64,000 nucleotides of DNA, from the IMG/VR virus record IMGVR_UViG_3300043446_005562, positions 186,001 through 250,000 of that record; one strand, given 5' to 3'. The translations under genes were made by a program, and so were the position numbers. Each line of letters starts with the position of its first letter. Position 1 is the first letter of the stretch. Shown here one piece after another: positions 35,532 to 40,054 of this stretch. A model generated the notes under the pieces. The model was not told the origin of the DNA. It was given only the letters and a program-made list of their open reading frames with translations, and ran no database searches.

Positions 35532-36623
35532 TTATTCTTCTTGATTCCAGAAAGGTTTTTGATAATCTGGTCGAATCTGCTTCCAGATCTGCTGACTGGG
35601 ATCCCGACCGTTCAGCAAGCAGAATAGGGTGCTCCAAGCGGTTTGCGGAACATTTTCTTGAATCCACAAGGCCTCGTCCTTTCTGGTCTTGAAACCCTGT
35701 TCAGATAATTGATTTAGATAATTTTGCGCAGACCTCATTCGCATGACATGTGCAACTTTTAGGGCAGCCTCCCACTGTCTAACCCATGCATCAAATTCAT
35801 CGGGCACCATCTCTAAAAATTGATCAAGTTCTTCGCCCCGGCTCAGGTGCTCCCAAATATCGACATTAGAAAAATTGGTCAAGAGCCGGTGCAATCGAAC
35901 GTATTCTTCGAATTTAATCTTCATTCTAAAATTTCCGGGCTGGAATCTTAGAACAAAACCTTCAGCCTTTCTAGTATTCATGGCCTTTAGGCTTTCATAG
36001 AGTTCAGGACTAAAATTAAAATGTTGCTCAGTTTTTACCAGATCAGATTTGCTAATTCCGTTTGACCTAAAAAAAGCGCACGCGGTTGTCCAGTGCAATT
36101 CAGTACCCTCAGAGATGGCGCTCAGAAAAACCACCCTGGGCTTGGAACCGTAATCAACAACTATACGATTCTTGGGATAGATGATTTCGCACAAGTAGGT
36201 TACTCGACGCTCAAATTGACGTAGTCCAAAATATTTCTCTTTTAGAATTTTTAAACCCTCAACTGCCTGATCCGAATGAAATGAACCTCGAGTGGCCATG
36301 TGCCAGGCGTCAGCATAATAGAATAGAATTCCCAATGAGCCGTCCATTTTTTGCTGCACATAAACGTAATCACCTTTGACTGGAATTTGACCAGTCTGCG
36401 CAGCCTCCTCGTAATTAAAGAATTTATTGAAACCCCTAGCCACAATCTCGCCTGAATCATCCATGATGAGACCTCGACACTGTAGAGTCACTTCATCCCA
36501 TGCCGAATCGTATTGGCATTTTCTAGAGTAATTGTAAATTGTCAACGGTAATTTGTTATGCCGATTGGCAACGACCAATCCACGGTTGACGTAATCCTTT
36601 AAGATAGTTTGAGTTAGGGTCAT
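35532..36623 (-). CDS. T4 Rnl1-like RNA ligase
   Basis: IYNYS, CRGLI, RGFNKFFN, QKMDGSLG, ATRGSF, EII, EGFV, KIKFEEY. Confidence 0.9.
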   Translation of the reverse strand: MTLTQTILKDYVNRGLVVANRHNKLPLTIYNYSRKCQYDSAWDEVTLQCRGLIMDDSGEIVARGFNKFFNYEEAAQTGQIPVKGDYVYVQQKMDGSLGILFYYADAWHMATRGSFHSDQAVEGLKILKEKYFGLRQFERRVTYLCEIIYPKNRIVVDYGSKPRVVFLSAISEGTELHWTTACAFFRSNGISKSDLVKTEQHFNFSPELYESLKAMNTRKAEGFVLRFQPGNFRMKIKFEEYVRLHRLLTNFSNVDIWEHLSRGEELDQFLEMVPDEFDAWVRQWEAALKVAHVMRMRSAQNYLNQLSEQGFKTRKDEALWIQENVPQTAWSTLFCLLNGRDPSQQIWKQIRPDYQKPFWNQEE

Positions 36624-37028
36624 TTATAATTTAATTTCAAAACGAGCTCTCATCTGCTCTACTTTTTCAGCCGGCACTCCATGAGAATTAATGCCACCGT
36701 GCCTATTTTCAACAATGATTGAGAAAACTCGATAGTTCCATTCCTTTGCTAAATCGTAATAGGCTTGCATTTCCCACTCTTGAGTAAATGTATTCGAGAC
36801 CACAATCACGGAATTTTGACCGGTTGTGTGATTTAGTATCATGGCGGTTTCCACATCACCATAACACCACTGATGAGCCTCCTTTAATTTAGAGGCATCG
36901 AATCGATATTCGCTATTCTCATCCAAGAAAAATCTGTCTGTTTCAAAATGAGAACCTCCAAGCTCTTTAGCTAGTGTTGATTTGCCCGCACCCGGCAAAC
37001 CTCGTAAAAGAAATAGTGTCTTTGTCAT
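36624..37028 (-). CDS. Polynucleotide 5'-kinase-like P-loop protein (AAA_33), no phosphatase domain
   Basis: RGLPGAGKST, ETDRFF, VSNTF, HGVP. Confidence 0.8.
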   Translation of the reverse strand: MTKTLFLLRGLPGAGKSTLAKELGGSHFETDRFFLDENSEYRFDASKLKEAHQWCYGDVETAMILNHTTGQNSVIVVSNTFTQEWEMQAYYDLAKEWNYRVFSIIVENRHGGINSHGVPAEKVEQMRARFEIKL

Positions 37029-37059
37029 GCTATTTTAGTTAATGATATTATACTAAAAG

Positions 37060-37141
37060 TGGGAGTAGGTGGACTCGAACCACCGAACTCAGAAGAGGAG
37101 GGATTTACAGTCCCTTGCAATTGCCGCTATGCGATACTCCC
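37060..37141 (-). tRNA. tRNA-Tyr(GUA)
   Basis: AGGGA-CTGTAAA-TCCCT, type II. Confidence 0.95.
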
Positions 37142-37281
37142 AAAATAAGGAAAGGGGAAGATGGTTGTGTGGACGACCCCTTTTACGATTGGCTTTACTC
37201 TGCTAATGATCTGCCAACTCCGATGCTGCCAGTCGACCATTAGTCTCAAACTATTGACAGCTCATTCCCCAATCAACCTTG

Positions 37282-37356
37282 TCGGGGTGGCAGGATTCGA
37301 ACCTACGACCTCCTGCTCCCAAAGCAGGCGCGATAACCGGACTACGCTACACCCCG
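37282..37356 (-). tRNA. tRNA-Pro(UGG)
   Basis: CCTGC-TTTGGGA-GCAGG. Confidence 0.95.
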
Positions 37357-37438
37357 AAAATCAATACGCTTTCGCCCCCTGTATGGCGTATTACTGATGC
37401 TTAAGGTCGGCCTTAACCGTTAAGGGAGCCACCAGTTG

Positions 37439-37511
37439 AGCGGATGGCGAGAATCGAACTCGCATCTCCAGCTTGGAAGGCTGGAGTAATAAGCCATTAT
37501 ACGACATCCGC
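37439..37511 (-). tRNA. tRNA-Gly(UCC)
   Basis: CCAGC-CTTCCAA-GCTGG, U73. Confidence 0.95.
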
Positions 37512-37518
37512 TTATTTG

Positions 37519-37591
37519 AGCGGGAGACCGGGTTCGAACCGGCGACCTCAACCTTGGCAAGGTTGCGCTCTACCAACTGAGCTACTCCCGC
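37519..37591 (-). tRNA. tRNA-Gly(GCC)
   Basis: CAACC-TTGCCAA-GGTTG, U73. Confidence 0.95.
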
Positions 37592-37595
37592 AATT

Positions 37596-37776
37596 GGGTA
37601 GGATCAGACGTGTTCTGCCTACTAGGCAGGTCTGCCTACCGAGACCTCGTCGTTAACTTTCGTCAGAGCGTACCGAGACACCATTTGTTTTTCGACTTGA
37701 GGTAGTCACGGCCGCCTCTGGTCCTCTCAAGTCTATTTCGTATCGTGGCAAGATGCGGCTCGACCCTGATACGCTG
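37596..37776 (-). ncRNA. Candidate structured ncRNA between tRNA-Thr and tRNA-Gly
   Basis: Multiple helices, including GACTTGAG/CTCAAGTC and GGTAGG/CCTACC. Confidence 0.5.
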
Positions 37777-37778
37777 TG

Positions 37779-37851
37779 AGCCTCCTGCCGGGATCGAACC
37801 AGCGACCTACTGATTACAAATCAGTTGCTCTACCAGCTGAGCTAAGGAGGC
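37779..37851 (-). tRNA. tRNA-Thr(UGU)
   Basis: ACTGA-TTTGTAA-TCAGT. Confidence 0.95.
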
Positions 37852-37934
37852 AAGATGAACCGTCACAGTGGTTCAGTCTGGTCATTTTCTTCTTCAGTCA
37901 TCGGTAAACCGCGACCTTCTGACGGTGACATCCA

Positions 37935-38011
37935 TGGTGGACCGTGAGAGACTCGAACTCTCGACCCCCTGCGTGCAAGGCAGGTGCTCTAGCCAACTGA
38001 GCTAACAGCCC
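37935..38011 (-). tRNA. tRNA-Ala(UGC)
   Basis: CCTGC-CTTGCAC-GCAGG, G3:U70, CCA. Confidence 0.95.
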
Positions 38012-38017
38012 ATTTTG

Positions 38018-38089
38018 TAGCCCGTACGAGAATCGAACTCGTCTCTCATCCGTGAAAGGGATGCGTCCTAACCGATAGACTAACGGGCC
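38018..38089 (-). tRNA. tRNA-Glu(UUC)
   Basis: CATCC-CTTTCAC-GGATG. Confidence 0.95.
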
Positions 38090-38211
38090 AAATAAAAACA
38101 TAATACTACTTTAATAGCGCTTACCCAATTTTACAACAGAGCGCGTTACCTTGCTAGACCGTTATTGGGCAACGACTTCTAACAATCCTACCTACCCATA
38201 TTATGTTTTTG

Positions 38212-38283
38212 CGGTCCCACCGGGAATCGAACCCGGCACTTTGCCGTGACAGGGCAATATTATAGCCGATTAACTATGAGACC
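38212..38283 (-). tRNA. tRNA-Asp(GUC)
   Basis: TTGCC-CTGTCAC-GGCAA, G73. Confidence 0.95.
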
Positions 38284-38289
38284 TTTTGC

Positions 38290-38480
38290 TCCTTATAAAT
38301 CCTTCCCGTGCACAGAACAAGAAACTGGGGAGACGTTGTTTCTACTTTTATGAAAGGCTTGGGTACCCTCTCCCACCGTTTCGCAGGTTGAAGCGTCCAT
38401 CTCCACGCCGTCCCTGTGGAACTACAGTGGCTGGTTGTTGCGGCATGCTGCGCTGTGATGGAACATTCGCACAAGCATTG
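38290..38480 (-). ncRNA. Candidate structured ncRNA between tRNA-fMet and tRNA-Asp
   Basis: At least five complementary pairs plus a possible pseudoknot. Confidence 0.55.
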
Positions 38481-38482
38481 AC

Positions 38483-38557
38483 TGGTTGCGGGTGCTGGAA
38501 TCGAACCAGCGATCTTTGGGTTATGAGCCCAACGAGTTACCATTTCTCCGACCCGCG
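38483..38557 (-). tRNA. Initiator tRNA-fMet(CAU)
   Basis: C1:A72 mismatch, three G-C pairs in TTGGG-CTCATAA-CCCAA, CCA. Confidence 0.95.
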
Positions 38558-38562
38558 ATGTG

Positions 38563-38633
38563 TTGTCCCGCAAGGATTCGAACCTCAATTCTCTGGACCA
38601 AAACCAGATGTGCTGCCGTTACACCACAGGACA
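38563..38633 (-). tRNA. tRNA-Gln(UUG)
   Basis: TCTGG-TTTTGGT-CCAGA. Confidence 0.93.
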
Positions 38634-38704
38634 ATTTACTATCTCCAATACGTCAAAGAACCTAATTCTCTTTGTATAGAATATTATACTATATTCCAGA
38701 GATC

Positions 38705-38778
38705 TGGCACGAGTGGAGAGATTCGAACTCCCATCAACGGTTTTGGAGACCGGTATGCTACCATTGCACCACACACGT
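38705..38778 (-). tRNA. tRNA-Trp(CCA)
   Basis: CCGGT-CTCCAAA-ACCGT, CCA end. Confidence 0.92.
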
Positions 38779-38782
38779 ATTT

Positions 38783-38859
38783 TGGTTGGAATAGTAGGAT
38801 TTGAACCTACGACCTCATGAGTATCAGTCATGCGCTCTAACCAACTGAGCTATATTCCA
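38783..38859 (-). tRNA. tRNA-Ile(GAU)
   Basis: CATGA-CTGATAC-TCATG, CCA end. Confidence 0.93.
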
Positions 38860-38862
38860 ATT

Positions 38863-38938
38863 TGGTGGTGCGGGGCAGGATCGAACTGCCGACACCAGGA
38901 TTTTCAGTCCTGTGCTCTACCGTCTGAGCTACCGCACC
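38863..38938 (-). tRNA. tRNA-Phe(GAA)
   Basis: CAGGA-CTGAAAA-TCCTG, CCA end. Confidence 0.95.
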
Positions 38939-38978: not shown

Positions 38979-39002
38979 CAGTGTTTCGTAGTTAATATTT
39001 CC

Positions 39003-39134
39003 TTAACTTAATCCGCTTGAACCTCGCAATGCCCCAAAATCTTTAATCGCTTCCGTTGCATTCACAGTAATTGTGCCTGCCGGATACTGATTCCAGTTTT
39101 GAGAAATTTTTGATGTGTTCGCGTAGTTTTGCAC
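39003..39134 (-). CDS. Putative attenuator leader peptide (43 aa, GTG start)
   Basis: MQNYANTSKISQNWNQYPAGTITVNATEAIKDFGALRGSSGLS; two promoter-like motifs upstream; contains the antiterminator segment. Confidence 0.7.
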   Translation of the reverse strand: MQNYANTSKISQNWNQYPAGTITVNATEAIKDFGALRGSSGLS

Positions 39135-39196
39135 GGTTTAAGTTTTTTGTCTAGTTATTTATAAAGCTATTATACCAACTTTTCGGAAAAAGGTTC

Positions 39197-40054
39197 TTAG
39201 TGTTGAATAATTTTCTTGGAGGTTCCGTCATCATACAGATAAATCATGATTTCATCTTTGCGGATATATTGAACCGGCCTGCCTAACATATCAACCACAC
39301 CAATTAATTTGGGTTCACGTTTAGTAAAAGTTTTAATTCCGCTTGTAGTGCAAGTTTCAATTGTAATACGTGTGAAGAAGAATGTATCTTGGTCCAAGCA
39401 TTTATTATACCATTGAGTTGCAATCAAGTAATGACCATCATGAGGGAATTTGTATTTGATAATGCGAGCATCATTACCCGGTCCTTTCTGCCAAACCAGA
39501 TCGCTATCATTAAAATCGTAATACATGTACAGCTGATCATCACTCATAGAATCCCAGTCGTGCTGATTTAGAGAATCTAGCATAGGTCCATTCCAAATAT
39601 AAGAATACCACTGCCAACAAGTATCGCCTTTCTTCCAAGGACCCAGAGTCATTTCACCAACCATACTATCATTACAGGTTCCGGTAGTACTCTTTAAATT
39701 ATAGACAAACTTAGAGTTGGGAAAATAAATCAATTCAATAGGACGATAAATCAGAGTATCGCATCCTTTACAACGGTTTTTCACTACGACACGCAAGTAA
39801 TACTTACCCTTTTTGTTGAATTGAACTTCGCAAATACCCCTATACGAATAGACAGTATCTAATTTTTTGGTTTGAAGATCAATTACTGTAAACATGTAAT
39901 CGACACAAGTATCATCCAATACTTGACCGCTTAAATACCATTTGTAAAGGTTACGCTGATTCCATTGTTGAAGTTTTAACGTGCTCCAATCACATTTTGC
40001 AGAGGCAGTAGCTGATGCAACGAAAAGCAGAACTGCTAATAGTAGTTTTTTCAC
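39197..40054 (-). CDS. Secreted Cys-containing beta-rich protein with CTD-like C-terminus
   Basis: Signal peptide; C-terminal LIGVVDMLGRPV...IYLYDDGTSKKII resembles Flavobacteriales sorting-type tails. Confidence 0.6.
   Translation of the reverse strand: MKKLLLAVLLFVASATASAKCDWSTLKLQQWNQRNLYKWYLSGQVLDDTCVDYMFTVIDLQTKKLDTVYSYRGICEVQFNKKGKYYLRVVVKNRCKGCDTLIYRPIELIYFPNSKFVYNLKSTTGTCNDSMVGEMTLGPWKKGDTCWQWYSYIWNGPMLDSLNQHDWDSMSDDQLYMYYDFNDSDLVWQKGPGNDARIIKYKFPHDGHYLIATQWYNKCLDQDTFFFTRITIETCTTSGIKTFTKREPKLIGVVDMLGRPVQYIRKDEIMIYLYDDGTSKKIIQH

What the first reader, a model, noticed from the sequence alone, without database searches (positions are those of the whole stretch)
38290..38480. About 190-nt multibranched RNA candidate with possible pseudoknot inside the tRNA array
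Seen on the minus strand: CTTGTGC/GCACGGG closing stem; CCACTGT/ACGGTGG enclosing TCCAC/GTGGA; GAGAGG/CCTTTC; AGAAAC/GTTTCT, whose loop TCTCCC is complementary to upstream GGGAGA (pseudoknot or switch). It is GC-rich, is bounded exactly by tRNA-fMet and tRNA-Asp, and so would be released by tRNA processing. Established: T4 encodes two stable RNAs of unknown function in its tRNA cluster, and GOLLD RNAs associate with phage tRNA arrays. I do not recognise a known family.
Basis: partly seen in the sequence, partly recalled or inferred. Interest (0 to 1): 0.66.

Follow-up and report, generated by a model that had tools for sequence, protein, structure and literature searches.

The report
Mosaic of small phage RNA hairpins
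The 199-base gap between two tRNA genes of this freshwater jumbo phage is not one large branched RNA but a string of short hairpin RNA modules, two of which belong to undescribed families found in many other freshwater phages; their function is unknown.

Summary
The spacer 38284-38482 (minus strand) lies exactly between tRNA-fMet and tRNA-Asp. As a single molecule it folds no better than shuffled sequence (z +0.5), and no Rfam family matches.

Comparison shows a mosaic. Spacer nt 1-87 are a diverged, shortened copy of a ~110-nt two-hairpin element that the phage's relatives keep at 93% identity just upstream of tRNA-Asp. Nt 89-137 (B1) and nt 134-195 (B2) are absent from those relatives but recur in about 70 other freshwater phage contigs, beside tRNA and tRNA-like genes and in changing order.

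B2 is a roughly 47-nt bulged hairpin behind a conserved A-rich leader. Eight of its 15 base pairs show compensatory changes (0 of 500 shuffles reach this).

The loop TCTCCC pairs with a downstream GGAG instead.

One metatranscriptome contig matches 38267-38443 exactly.

I take the modules to be small RNAs co-transcribed with the tRNAs and released by tRNA processing. Function is unknown. A better-supported RNA with pairing between its two loops lies in the neighbouring Thr-Gly spacer.

The parts
38483..38557 (-). tRNA-fMet (CAT), upstream boundary of the spacer; its encoded CCA ends at 38483
   Evidence: ARAGORN and Rfam tRNA, 59.5 bits; initiator features read
38445..38478 (-). HP1': short hairpin (AUGCU-uGU-GCG / CGC-AGCAU). 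It is the likely shortened counterpart of hairpin 1 of the relatives' 'pre-Asp element'.
   Evidence: The local alignment of spacer nt 35-87 with element nt 54-105 includes the 3' strand (GCAUG): score 39 against 18.4 +/- 3.1 for shuffles. Seen in the fold. Weakest part: the R1 model deletes hairpin 1 in its match.
38433..38440 (-). Linker CAACAACC, shared with the pre-Asp element (AAACAACC)
38403..38430 (-). HP2: CCAC-UGUA-GUUCC-ACA-GGGAC-GGC-GUGG. It has the same architecture as hairpin 2 of the pre-Asp element (L002, L003, L005, L071, L098) and of L107.
   Evidence: Best hit of model R1 in 20 kb: 38395-38450, 16.3 bits, E 0.008. Outer and inner stems change compensatorily between window, L002 and L005. 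L107 keeps CCAC/GUGG.
38346..38394 (-). Module B1: a motif GCUUCAACCUGC.AAACGGU followed by the hairpin GAGAGG (38372-38367) / CCUUUC (38357-38352), which has a conserved 9-nt loop (GUAMCCAAG)
   Evidence: 15 distinct homologs; alignment A7; hairpin 95.6% paired with 3 of 6 pairs compensatory
38288..38349 (-). Module B2. Its parts are: an A-rich leader AAAAGUAGAAACAAC (38349-38335); helix P1, (G)uCUCC 38334-38329 with GGAGC 38292-38288; an internal loop; helix P2, UCUUgUUCUG 38322-38313 with CGGGAAGGA 38308-38300; an apical loop UGCA 38312-38309.
   Evidence: Model R2 scores 91.3 bits, E 1e-17. Alignment A6 of 46 sequences is 93.6% paired, with 8 of 15 pairs compensatory and 0 of 500 shuffles as high. 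RNAfold of the isolated segment gives this fold. It is 100% identical over 63 nt to L105.
38211..38283 (-). tRNA-Asp (GTC), downstream boundary. Its 5' end lies 4 nt after B2, so RNase P cleavage here would make the 3' end of the released spacer RNA.
   Evidence: The RNase P step is inferred from established tRNA processing, not shown.

Best explanation
The spacer is a mosaic of short, separately conserved hairpin RNA modules that are transcribed together with the tRNAs.

The 5' 87 nt (HP1', linker, HP2) are a diverged and shortened copy of a ~110-nt two-hairpin element. The phage's relatives keep that element nearly unchanged, usually directly upstream of tRNA-Asp.

The 3' 110 nt are two modules, B1 and B2. 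This phage alone among its relatives carries them, so they were most likely acquired by recombination. They belong to families of small RNA modules that are spread through the tRNA and tRNA-like gene arrays of many other freshwater phages and are found there in varying order.

Shown: homology, modularity, covarying hairpins on the tRNA strand, and presence in one RNA library.

Inferred: the modules are cut out of the polycistronic precursor by the tRNA-processing enzymes. RNase P at the 5' end of tRNA-Asp would make the 3' end. Cleavage after the tRNA-fMet CCA and in the A-rich linkers would make the other ends. The bulged B2 hairpin, whose single-stranded parts barely vary, then acts as a self-contained small RNA that is recognised by a conserved partner, most likely a protein.
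For: - Array and boundaries.
- Relatives: the array of the closest relative, L002 (ligase 82% aa identity), is collinear and its other spacers align at 72-84%. The Met-Asp slot is the one break.
- Pre-Asp element: about 110 nt, 93% mean identity in L002, L071, L003 and L005 although their ligases are only 57-82% identical to the window's. It has compensatory pairs and G-U wobbles on the tRNA strand. The L002 copy folds at z -2.45. In L098 it is the whole Met-Glu spacer.
- Window copy of that element: R1's best hit in 20 kb falls in the slot (E 0.008). The local alignment reaches a score that none of 1000 shuffles reached.
- B1 and B2 elsewhere: 5 viral loci, 1 contig from a metagenome-assembled genome, 40 metagenome loci and 33 further viral loci. 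L107 is 86% identical over spacer nt 49-195. L105 is 100% identical over 63 nt but has B2 before B1.
- Covariation: B2, B1. All one-sided changes in P2 are A/G opposite U, which fits RNA on this strand.
- Distribution: R2 finds one clear copy in the 252.6-kb genome and none in 1.03 Mb of loci from relatives.
- Position: B2 lies 3-5 nt after tRNA-Glu, or 3-9 nt before a tRNA or tRNA-like gene, in many loci.
- Expression: RNA run X16 has a 177-nt contig identical to 38267-38443 (depth 36.5), while the coding flanks have depth 0.
- Strain variants in two other studies keep the whole slot at about 99%.
Against: - No function is shown.
- The RNA evidence is one assembled contig. It crosses the B2/tRNA-Asp junction, so it shows the precursor (or DNA carry-over), not a stable processed RNA. 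The second RNA run, X15, has nothing there.
- The window's spacer is no more stable than shuffles.
- The HP1' homology is weak.
- Part of the sequence invariance of B2 comes from the exact-match patterns used to find it.
- In the window P1 is only 4-5 bp.
- No protein family accompanies B2 in more than 13 of 71 loci, so no partner is identified.
- Acquisition by recombination is inferred from distribution only; no junction repeats were seen.
Confidence: 0.6

Rival explanations
1. Cis-acting punctuation of the tRNA precursor. The hairpins and their A-rich linkers are not products. They would be processing or stability signals that guide RNase E, RNase III or RNase P, protect ends, or terminate transcription for the neighbouring tRNA or tRNA-like genes.
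For: B2 nearly always abuts a tRNA 3' end or a tRNA or tRNA-like 5' end. Its leader AAAAGUAGAAACAA also stands directly before a plain tRNA in L111 and L146. In L132 and L144, P1 is followed by a run of U and then a protein gene, like a terminator. The only RNA contig spans the uncut junction.
Against: Most tRNAs in these arrays are separated by only 1-12 nt and need no such element. B2 also occurs after protein genes and in a ~700-nt noncoding region (L105, L110) with no tRNA beside it. Near-invariant loops are more than a generic RNase site would need. No terminator-like site is found in the window array.
Confidence: 0.22
2. One reading: one ~190-nt multibranched RNA closed by CTTGTGC/GCACGGG, with a pseudoknot or switch between TCTCCC and GGGAGA.
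For: All stems exist in the sequence. The minimum-free-energy fold of the whole spacer uses several of them. HP2, B1 and B2 do travel together in one other phage, L107.
Against: The fold energy equals that of shuffles. GCACGGG is the apex of the covarying P2. B2 and B1 occur without the 5' part in about 70 loci and in either order. L107 has no CTTGTGC-like partner and breaks TCCAC/GTGGA (by eye). GGGAGA varies (GAAGGA, AAUGAG) with no compensating change in UCUCCC, which instead covaries with the downstream GGAG.
Confidence: 0.05
3. A DNA-level element: a promoter (TTGTTC-N17-TATAAG lies inside B2) or an operator (palindrome CTGTGCACAG), not an RNA.
For: The hexamers and the spacing can be read from the sequence. 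Many copies carry a 10-nt palindrome at the apex. Some B2 copies stand at the start of an array, after AT-rich DNA.
Against: The compensatory changes in P1 and P2, and the exclusive U-A/U-G alternation, point to an RNA helix on the tRNA strand. The consensus scan does not call a promoter here; its only minus-strand call is at 38710-38683. The second hexamer lacks the conserved last T.
Confidence: 0.06
4. In this phage the spacer is decaying junk: a broken pre-Asp element plus passively carried foreign sequence with no present role.
For: The window's copy of the pre-Asp element is far more diverged than the copies in relatives (93% among them; R1 gives only 16 bits here). Its hairpin 1 is truncated. 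No half folds better than chance. P1 of B2 is weak here.
Against: B2 is 100% identical over 63 nt to L105 and scores 91 bits. The B1 hairpin is intact. Strain variants from two other studies keep the slot at about 99%.
Confidence: 0.07

Closest known systems
Phage T4 stable RNAs 'species 1' and 'species 2' (rnaC, rnaD) in the T4 tRNA cluster (from my own knowledge of the literature)
   Same: They are small non-tRNA RNAs encoded inside a phage tRNA gene cluster. They are co-transcribed with the tRNAs, released by the tRNA-processing enzymes, and still of unknown function. A T4 Rnl1-type RNA ligase and a small kinase lie next to the array here too.
   Different: No sequence similarity to any cultured phage record. 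The modules here are shorter (about 30-60 nt each), modular and shuffled between phages. Processing and stability have not been shown.
GOLLD and ROOL large ornate RNAs of phages (Rfam; bioRxiv 10.1101/2024.12.08.627333)
   Same: Phage and prophage RNAs of unknown function, often near tRNA islands; GOLLD can carry tRNAs in a linker region. Found in lake metagenomes.
   Different: Those are 500-800 nt single RNAs with defined Rfam models. Neither model matches the window or L105, L107 and L108, even at loose thresholds.
Operator-type protein-binding hairpins (such as the MS2 and PP7 coat-protein hairpins; resemblance from my own knowledge, a lead only)
   Same: B2 is a short hairpin with a single bulged purine, a small conserved apical loop and conserved unpaired bases. 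That is the usual look of a sequence-specific protein site.
   Different: No sequence relation, no partner protein identified, and a DNA phage context.
Poribacteria-1 RNA (Rfam RF03113)
   Same: It is the only Rfam model that touches the spacer. It aligns a hairpin followed by GCUUCAA and ends near an AAGGAGA-like motif.
   Different: 14.8 bits against a gathering score of 74.2; E 2.1 in a search of only 199 nt, which is chance level.

Membership tests
Any Rfam 15 family | Score at or above the family's gathering threshold | tested here: not met
   Only tRNAs pass in the window. Nothing falls in 38284-38482 at E<=10 in a 2.4-kb search. The best hit in a 199-nt search is Poribacteria-1 at 14.8 bits against 74.2.
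tRNA, tRNA remnant or tmRNA | Cloverleaf with T-arm (tRNA); tag reading frame plus tRNA-like ends (tmRNA) | tested here: not met
   ARAGORN and the Rfam tRNA, tmRNA and YrlA models give nothing in the spacer. There is no GGTTCGA-type T-loop in the sequence.
GOLLD RNA | About 800 nt with a conserved 3' domain that matches Rfam RF01998 | tested here: not met
   No match in the window or in L105, L107 and L108. The spacer is 199 nt.
Self-cleaving ribozymes (hammerhead, twister, pistol, hatchet, HDV-like) | Match to the conserved catalytic core models | tested here: not met
   No Rfam hit at E<=10. Cleavage activity itself is not testable here.
T4-type stable RNAs of tRNA clusters | Encoded within a co-oriented phage tRNA cluster | tested here: met
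   14 tRNAs lie on the minus strand at 37059-38938, and the spacer lies between two of them.
T4-type stable RNAs of tRNA clusters | Accumulates as a discrete stable RNA after RNase P / RNase E processing | not testable with these tools
   Only an assembled RNA-library contig across 38267-38443 is available. Contigs show neither ends nor abundance of a processed species.
T4-type stable RNAs of tRNA clusters | Sequence homology to T4 rnaC or rnaD | tested here: not met
   blastn of the spacer against 50,697 phage records gives no match.
B2 hairpin family (defined here, model R2) | Leader GUAGAAACAA; P1; internal loop; P2 with a bulged G; UGCA loop; AUUUAUAAGG | tested here: met
   91.3 bits, E 1e-17 at 38284-38355 (G000:224284-224355). 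All motifs are present.
B1 module family (defined here, alignment A7) | GCUUCAACCUGC.AAACGGU plus a 6-bp hairpin with the loop GUAMCCAAG | tested here: met
   The window row aligns over the full length. The hairpin is GAGAGG/CCUUUC with one G-U pair.
Pre-Asp element of the phage's relatives (model R1) | Hairpin 1 (9 bp plus an inner stem), linker AAACAACC, hairpin 2, tail ending ..AGAGAAAC directly before the next tRNA | tested here: inconclusive
   The linker and hairpin 2 match (16.3 bits, E 0.008, top hit of 20 kb; alignment score beyond all 1000 shuffles). Hairpin 1 is deleted in the model alignment. The tail is not detectably conserved (p 0.49). The element is not adjacent to tRNA-Asp here.

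The most novel reading that the evidence does not exclude
B1, B2, the pre-Asp element and the neighbouring Thr-Gly RNA may be members of a so far undescribed repertoire of small RNA 'cassettes'. Freshwater phages would exchange these between their tRNA and tRNA-like gene arrays and express them with the tRNAs. The cassettes would act in trans, for example as decoys or binding sites for host RNA-targeting defence or translation factors, in parallel to the way phage tRNAs and the adjacent RNA ligase and kinase counter tRNA-cleaving defences.

One untested hint: in most B2 copies, P1 pairs CACCUCC (as at the 3' end of 16S rRNA) with UAAGGAGG (a perfect Shine-Dalgarno sequence). The pairing covaries away from these sequences in about a third of copies, including the window.
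Probability: 0.15. Interest if true: 0.8.

Novelty: new member of a known kind. Interest (0 to 1): 0.55.

Why it matters
Phage tRNA clusters have been known for fifty years to carry extra stable RNAs whose role has never been found, and large phage RNAs such as GOLLD and ROOL also sit near tRNA islands.

This window shows that uncultured freshwater phages hold several more such RNAs. They are short, strongly conserved, supported by covariation and absent from Rfam. They behave as modules that are swapped between phages.

That gives concrete, small (about 50-110 nt) targets for structure probing, pull-downs and deletion. It also suggests that spacers in phage tRNA arrays are gene space rather than filler. 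For genome annotation, long GC-rich gaps in tRNA arrays should be searched for these modules.

Tried and rejected
- **Single-sequence folding** of the whole spacer and of its halves, on both strands: no better than shuffles.
- **Rfam** at gathering and loose thresholds: nothing. The Poribacteria-1 hit at E 2.1 is chance level.
- **blastn against cultured phage genomes** for the spacer, the pre-Asp element and the Thr-Gly RNA: no match.
- **A 30-nt exact pattern from HP2** in IMG/VR: nothing.
- **Premature early conclusion.** I first concluded 'no homolog anywhere' from the 54 ligase-anchored loci. This was overturned once patterns from the 3' half were scanned.
- **Second degenerate copy.** The idea that spacer nt 84-199 is a second copy of the pre-Asp element was rejected (alignment p 0.49).
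- **Alternative proximal pairing** CCUCCCC/GGGGAGG inside B2: no compensatory change and 71% paired.
- **Small ORF through B2, or a start codon in the following B3 hairpin:** rejected. The start is not conserved, and the changes follow base pairing, not codons (by eye).
- **tmRNA-like or 16S-like resemblances** of short motifs (AACCUGC, GGUAACC, AAGU.G.AACAA): by my own estimate these are compatible with chance, so I do not claim them.
- **Co-located partner protein:** ORF clustering in 71 B2 loci gave no family in more than 13 loci.
- **Literature:** a full-text search for the B2 core sequence found nothing. The supplement of the IMG/VR structured-RNA survey is not held.
- **Not used because not relevant:** the protein searches, structure prediction and complex prediction.

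Full report
**Setting.** The window is bases 186001-250000 of a 252.6-kb IMG/VR virus record that is about 93% complete. On the minus strand, 14 tRNA genes lie between 37059 and 38938, with five more elsewhere. Directly downstream are a T4 Rnl1-type RNA ligase (35532-36623) and a small AAA_33 kinase (36624-37028). The finding is the 199-nt spacer 38284-38482 between tRNA-Met(CAT) and tRNA-Asp. Below, 'spacer nt i' means window position 38483 minus i.

**The observation.** On its own the sequence gives no sign of selected structure. The minimum free energy is -53.9 kcal/mol against -56.0 +/- 4.1 for dinucleotide shuffles (z +0.51). Each half, on either strand, lies within half a standard deviation of its shuffles. 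No Rfam family matches, even at E<=10.

**Relatives of the phage.** The ligase brought in 54 loci. The closest, L002 (82% aa identity, a 253-kb contig), has a collinear array. Its Trp-Gln, Asp-Glu, Ala-Thr, Thr-Gly and Gly-Pro spacers align with the window's at 72-92%. The Met-Asp slot is the one break: 218 nt in L002 that do not align with the window's 199 nt.

- Anchoring on the shared tRNA-Asp and on a motif showed what relatives hold in this slot.
- The first part is a variable tRNA-like gene. It is an odd ~108-nt tRNA-like in L002, L099 and L103, a CAT tRNA-like in L071, and a TTA suppressor tRNA in L003.
- It is followed by a ~110-nt 'pre-Asp element' that is 93% identical among L002, L071, L003 and L005.
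- That element has two hairpins joined by AAACAACC, with compensatory and G-U changes on the tRNA strand.
- The L002 copy folds better than all 200 shuffles (z -2.45).
- In L098 the element is the entire spacer between tRNA-Met and tRNA-Glu.

**The 5' part of the window's spacer.** A covariance model of the pre-Asp element (R1) was run without filters over 20 kb of the window. Its best hit falls inside the slot, at 38395-38450 (16.3 bits, E 0.008). The hit aligns the linker and hairpin 2 and deletes hairpin 1. A local alignment of spacer nt 35-87 with element nt 54-105 scores 39 against 18.4 +/- 3.1 for shuffles (0 of 1000 as high).

Hairpin 2 has the same layout in all three types:

| Source | Outer stem 5' | Bulge | Inner stem 5' | Loop | Inner stem 3' | Bulge | Outer stem 3' |
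|---|---|---|---|---|---|---|---|
| Window | CCAC | UGUA | GUUCC | ACA | GGGAC | GGC | GUGG |
| L002 | UCAC | GGUA | UACCC | ACA | GGGUA | GGA | GUGA |
| L005 | UCAC | GGUA | UGCUC | UACG | GGGCA | GGA | GUGA |

Both stems change compensatorily. So spacer nt 1-87 are a diverged and shortened copy of the relatives' element. Nt 84-199 show no similarity to it (p 0.49).

**The 3' part.** Laying public runs on the region gave the first hint that this part occurs elsewhere. Some DNA contigs carry only 38288-38394, with four substitutions, joined to a tRNA-Glu-like end. Exact-word scans then found the core of the last 60 nt in:

- 5 IMG/VR loci;
- one phage-like contig from a metagenome-assembled genome among 185,579 species genomes;
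- 40 true metagenome loci;
- with a looser two-anchor pattern, 33 IMG/VR loci.

L107 is 86% identical to spacer nt 49-195, so HP2, B1 and B2 lie together there in an unrelated context. L105 is 100% identical over nt 135-197 but carries the preceding module after it. Two modules can be delimited.

**Module B2 (38349-38288).** It consists of an A-rich leader with GUAGAAACAA, a helix P1, an internal loop, a helix P2 with one bulged G, and a UGCA loop.

- On a MAFFT alignment of 46 sequences (A6), the 15 pairs are 93.6% paired.
- Eight pairs have changes on both sides, against 3.6 +/- 1.1 in shuffles (0 of 500 as high). That is 35 cells, and sliding the partners drops pairing to 65% or less.
- Examples in P1: CCUCC/GGAGG, CCACC/GGUGG, AUCCUC/GGGGAU, UUUCC/GGAAA.
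- Examples in P2: UUCUG/CAGGA, GGUG/CACC, GGCG/CGCC, and UUGAC/GUCAA in L157 (by eye; MAFFT aligns this insertion differently).
- One-sided changes in P2 are all A/G opposite U, which fits an RNA helix on the tRNA strand.
- The unpaired parts hardly vary, even in the sets where the search pattern did not fix them.
- RNAfold of the isolated window segment returns this same fold.

**Module B1 (38394-38346).** It has a conserved 5' motif and the hairpin GAGAGG/CCUUUC. In 15 sequences the hairpin is 95.6% paired, with 3 of 6 pairs compensatory (GAAGGG/CCCUUC, GAAAGG/CCUUUC).

**Where the modules occur.** The B2 model (R2) finds one clear copy in the phage's own genome and none in 1.03 Mb of loci from its relatives. 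The window's lineage therefore stands alone among its relatives in carrying B1 and B2.

|---|---|---|
| GAGAGG/CCTTTC | Correct | Covaries |
| AGAAAC/GTTTCT | Untestable | Invariant. It overlaps the 5' strand of P2, and its 5' word belongs to a leader that also precedes a plain tRNA in L111 and L146 |
| Closing stem, GCACGGG | Not supported | GCACGGG is the apex of P2, and B2 occurs in about 70 contexts without the 5' word |
| CCACTGT/ACGGTGG and TCCAC/GTGGA | Not supported | Not kept in L107; B1 occurs mostly without HP2 |
| Loop TCTCCC with upstream GGGAGA | Not supported | The loop covaries with the downstream GGAG. GGGAGA changes to GAAGGA or AAUGAG without compensation |

**Expression.** All the runs laid are assembled contigs, so ends and levels cannot be read.

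- Riverine metatranscriptome X16 holds a 177-nt contig identical to 38267-38443 (depth 36.5). The coding flanks 36800-37051 and 38984-39300 have depth 0, which argues against plain DNA carry-over.
- The contig crosses the B2/tRNA-Asp junction, so it shows the precursor.
- The second RNA run, X15, has nothing there.
- DNA contigs from two other studies carry the whole slot with two substitutions. The phage occurs in freshwater, reservoir, estuary and wastewater samples of 13 studies.

**Interpretation.** The evidence shows a chain of separately conserved hairpin modules, not one branched RNA. I infer that they are co-transcribed with the tRNAs and cut out by the tRNA-processing enzymes, and that B2 in particular is a self-contained small RNA recognised by a conserved partner. 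The grounds are:

- B2's unpaired bases are as conserved as its helices are variable.
- It occurs in many different neighbourhoods, including after protein genes and inside a ~700-nt noncoding region.

The main rival is a cis role in precursor processing or termination, suggested by B2's habitual position against tRNA ends. No neighbouring protein family accompanies B2 consistently, and the literature search found nothing on its core sequence. The closest known things are the T4 stable RNAs of the tRNA cluster and, more loosely, GOLLD and ROOL near phage tRNA islands. Membership of any described family was tested and not met.

**A stronger candidate next door.** The Thr-Gly spacer (37777-37592) is 94.6% identical to L003 over 147 nt, although the two ligases share only 59%. 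Its first ~90 nt form a two-hairpin module found in 17 IMG/VR loci.

- On 10 sequences it is 99.4% paired, with 9 of 16 pairs compensatory.
- One of those is a loop-loop pair (A-U in 6 sequences, G-C in 4, no exception) within a 5-bp interaction, GCCRC with GYGGC.
- RNA-library contigs of a relative cover it at depths of 494 and 132.
- Rfam has no match.

Noticed in passing
window 37592-37777 (minus strand), mainly 37690-37777: The Thr-Gly spacer holds a strongly conserved RNA: 94.6% identity to L003 and 91.8% to L002. Its first ~90 nt are two hairpins whose loops pair with each other (GCCRC with GYGGC). It is 99.4% paired, with 9 of 16 pairs compensatory. RNA-library contigs cover it at depths of 494 and 132. 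There is no Rfam match. It is found in 17 IMG/VR loci next to tRNA-Thr.
   Followed up: partly
L002:3498-3609; L071:6104-6215; L003:3269-3380; L005:5976-6087; L098 (Met-Glu spacer): A ~110-nt 'pre-Asp element' is conserved at 93% across phages whose ligases are 57-82% identical to the window's. It has two covarying hairpins; the L002 copy folds at z -2.45. No Rfam or cultured-phage match.
   Followed up: partly
window 37357-37437 and 38634-38704 (minus strand): The Gly(TCC)-Pro spacer (81 nt) is 91% identical to L002 and 75% to L003/L004. The Trp-Gln spacer (71 nt) is 82% identical to L002 and contains the only sigma-70-like site on the tRNA strand (GTGCCA-16-TATAAT, 38710-38683).
   Followed up: no
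L002:3393-3500, and the same position in L099-L104 and L103: An odd ~108-nt tRNA-like gene: acceptor GAUUAGA/UCUAAUC, a normal T-arm and a long irregular middle. ARAGORN and Rfam do not call it. L071 has a different tRNA-like gene with a CAT loop, and L003 a TTA suppressor tRNA, in the same slot. L004 and L006 carry predicted TCA (opal-reading) tRNAs.
   Followed up: no
L107:1955-2070 and 2275-2361; L108:1276-1367 and 1485-1595; also L169, L183, L159: tRNA-like genes with the acceptor AGUCAGG/CCUGACU, class-II-type D-arms and long inserts in place of a normal anticodon arm stand next to B2 in many freshwater phage contigs. Rfam tRNA scores are 26-42 bits. ARAGORN calls them only as improbable intron-bearing tRNAs.
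   Followed up: no
for example L108:1436-1487; most loci: A further module, 'B3', follows B2 in most metagenome loci. It is a hairpin whose stem covaries (UUGGAU/AUCCAA, UUGAGU/ACUCAA) around a conserved loop GACGUUUAUCUUUUGUA, followed by AAUAAACAGAAAAAGG. It is not present in the window.
   Followed up: no
L105 (oriented as) about 600-1310; L110:790-1380 (minus strand): A noncoding region of about 600-700 nt contains B2, B1 and repeated units: a hairpin with the loop UUCCCAAGG, and long-range complementary words CAGUUGUAAU / AUUACAACUG. It may be a large structured RNA. GOLLD and ROOL models do not match; there is only a weak DUF2693-RNA hit of 28 bits just upstream.
   Followed up: no
window 35532-37028 (minus strand): A T4 Rnl1-type RNA ligase (PF09511, 77 bits) and a 134-aa AAA_33 kinase lie directly downstream of the tRNA array. 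This looks like a tRNA-repair pair of the kind T4 uses against anticodon nucleases.
   Followed up: partly
G000:C1:172792-172836 (outside the window): A marginal second match of the B2 model in the phage's own genome (20.5 bits, E 0.09). Not examined.
   Followed up: no
L060, L066, L077, L079, L085 (68-69 nt before tRNA-Asp): Another lineage has its own conserved hairpin spacer before the same tRNA-Asp: an outer stem GGGCCC...GGGCCC with an inner stem that looks covarying by eye. Structured spacers seem common in these arrays.
   Followed up: no
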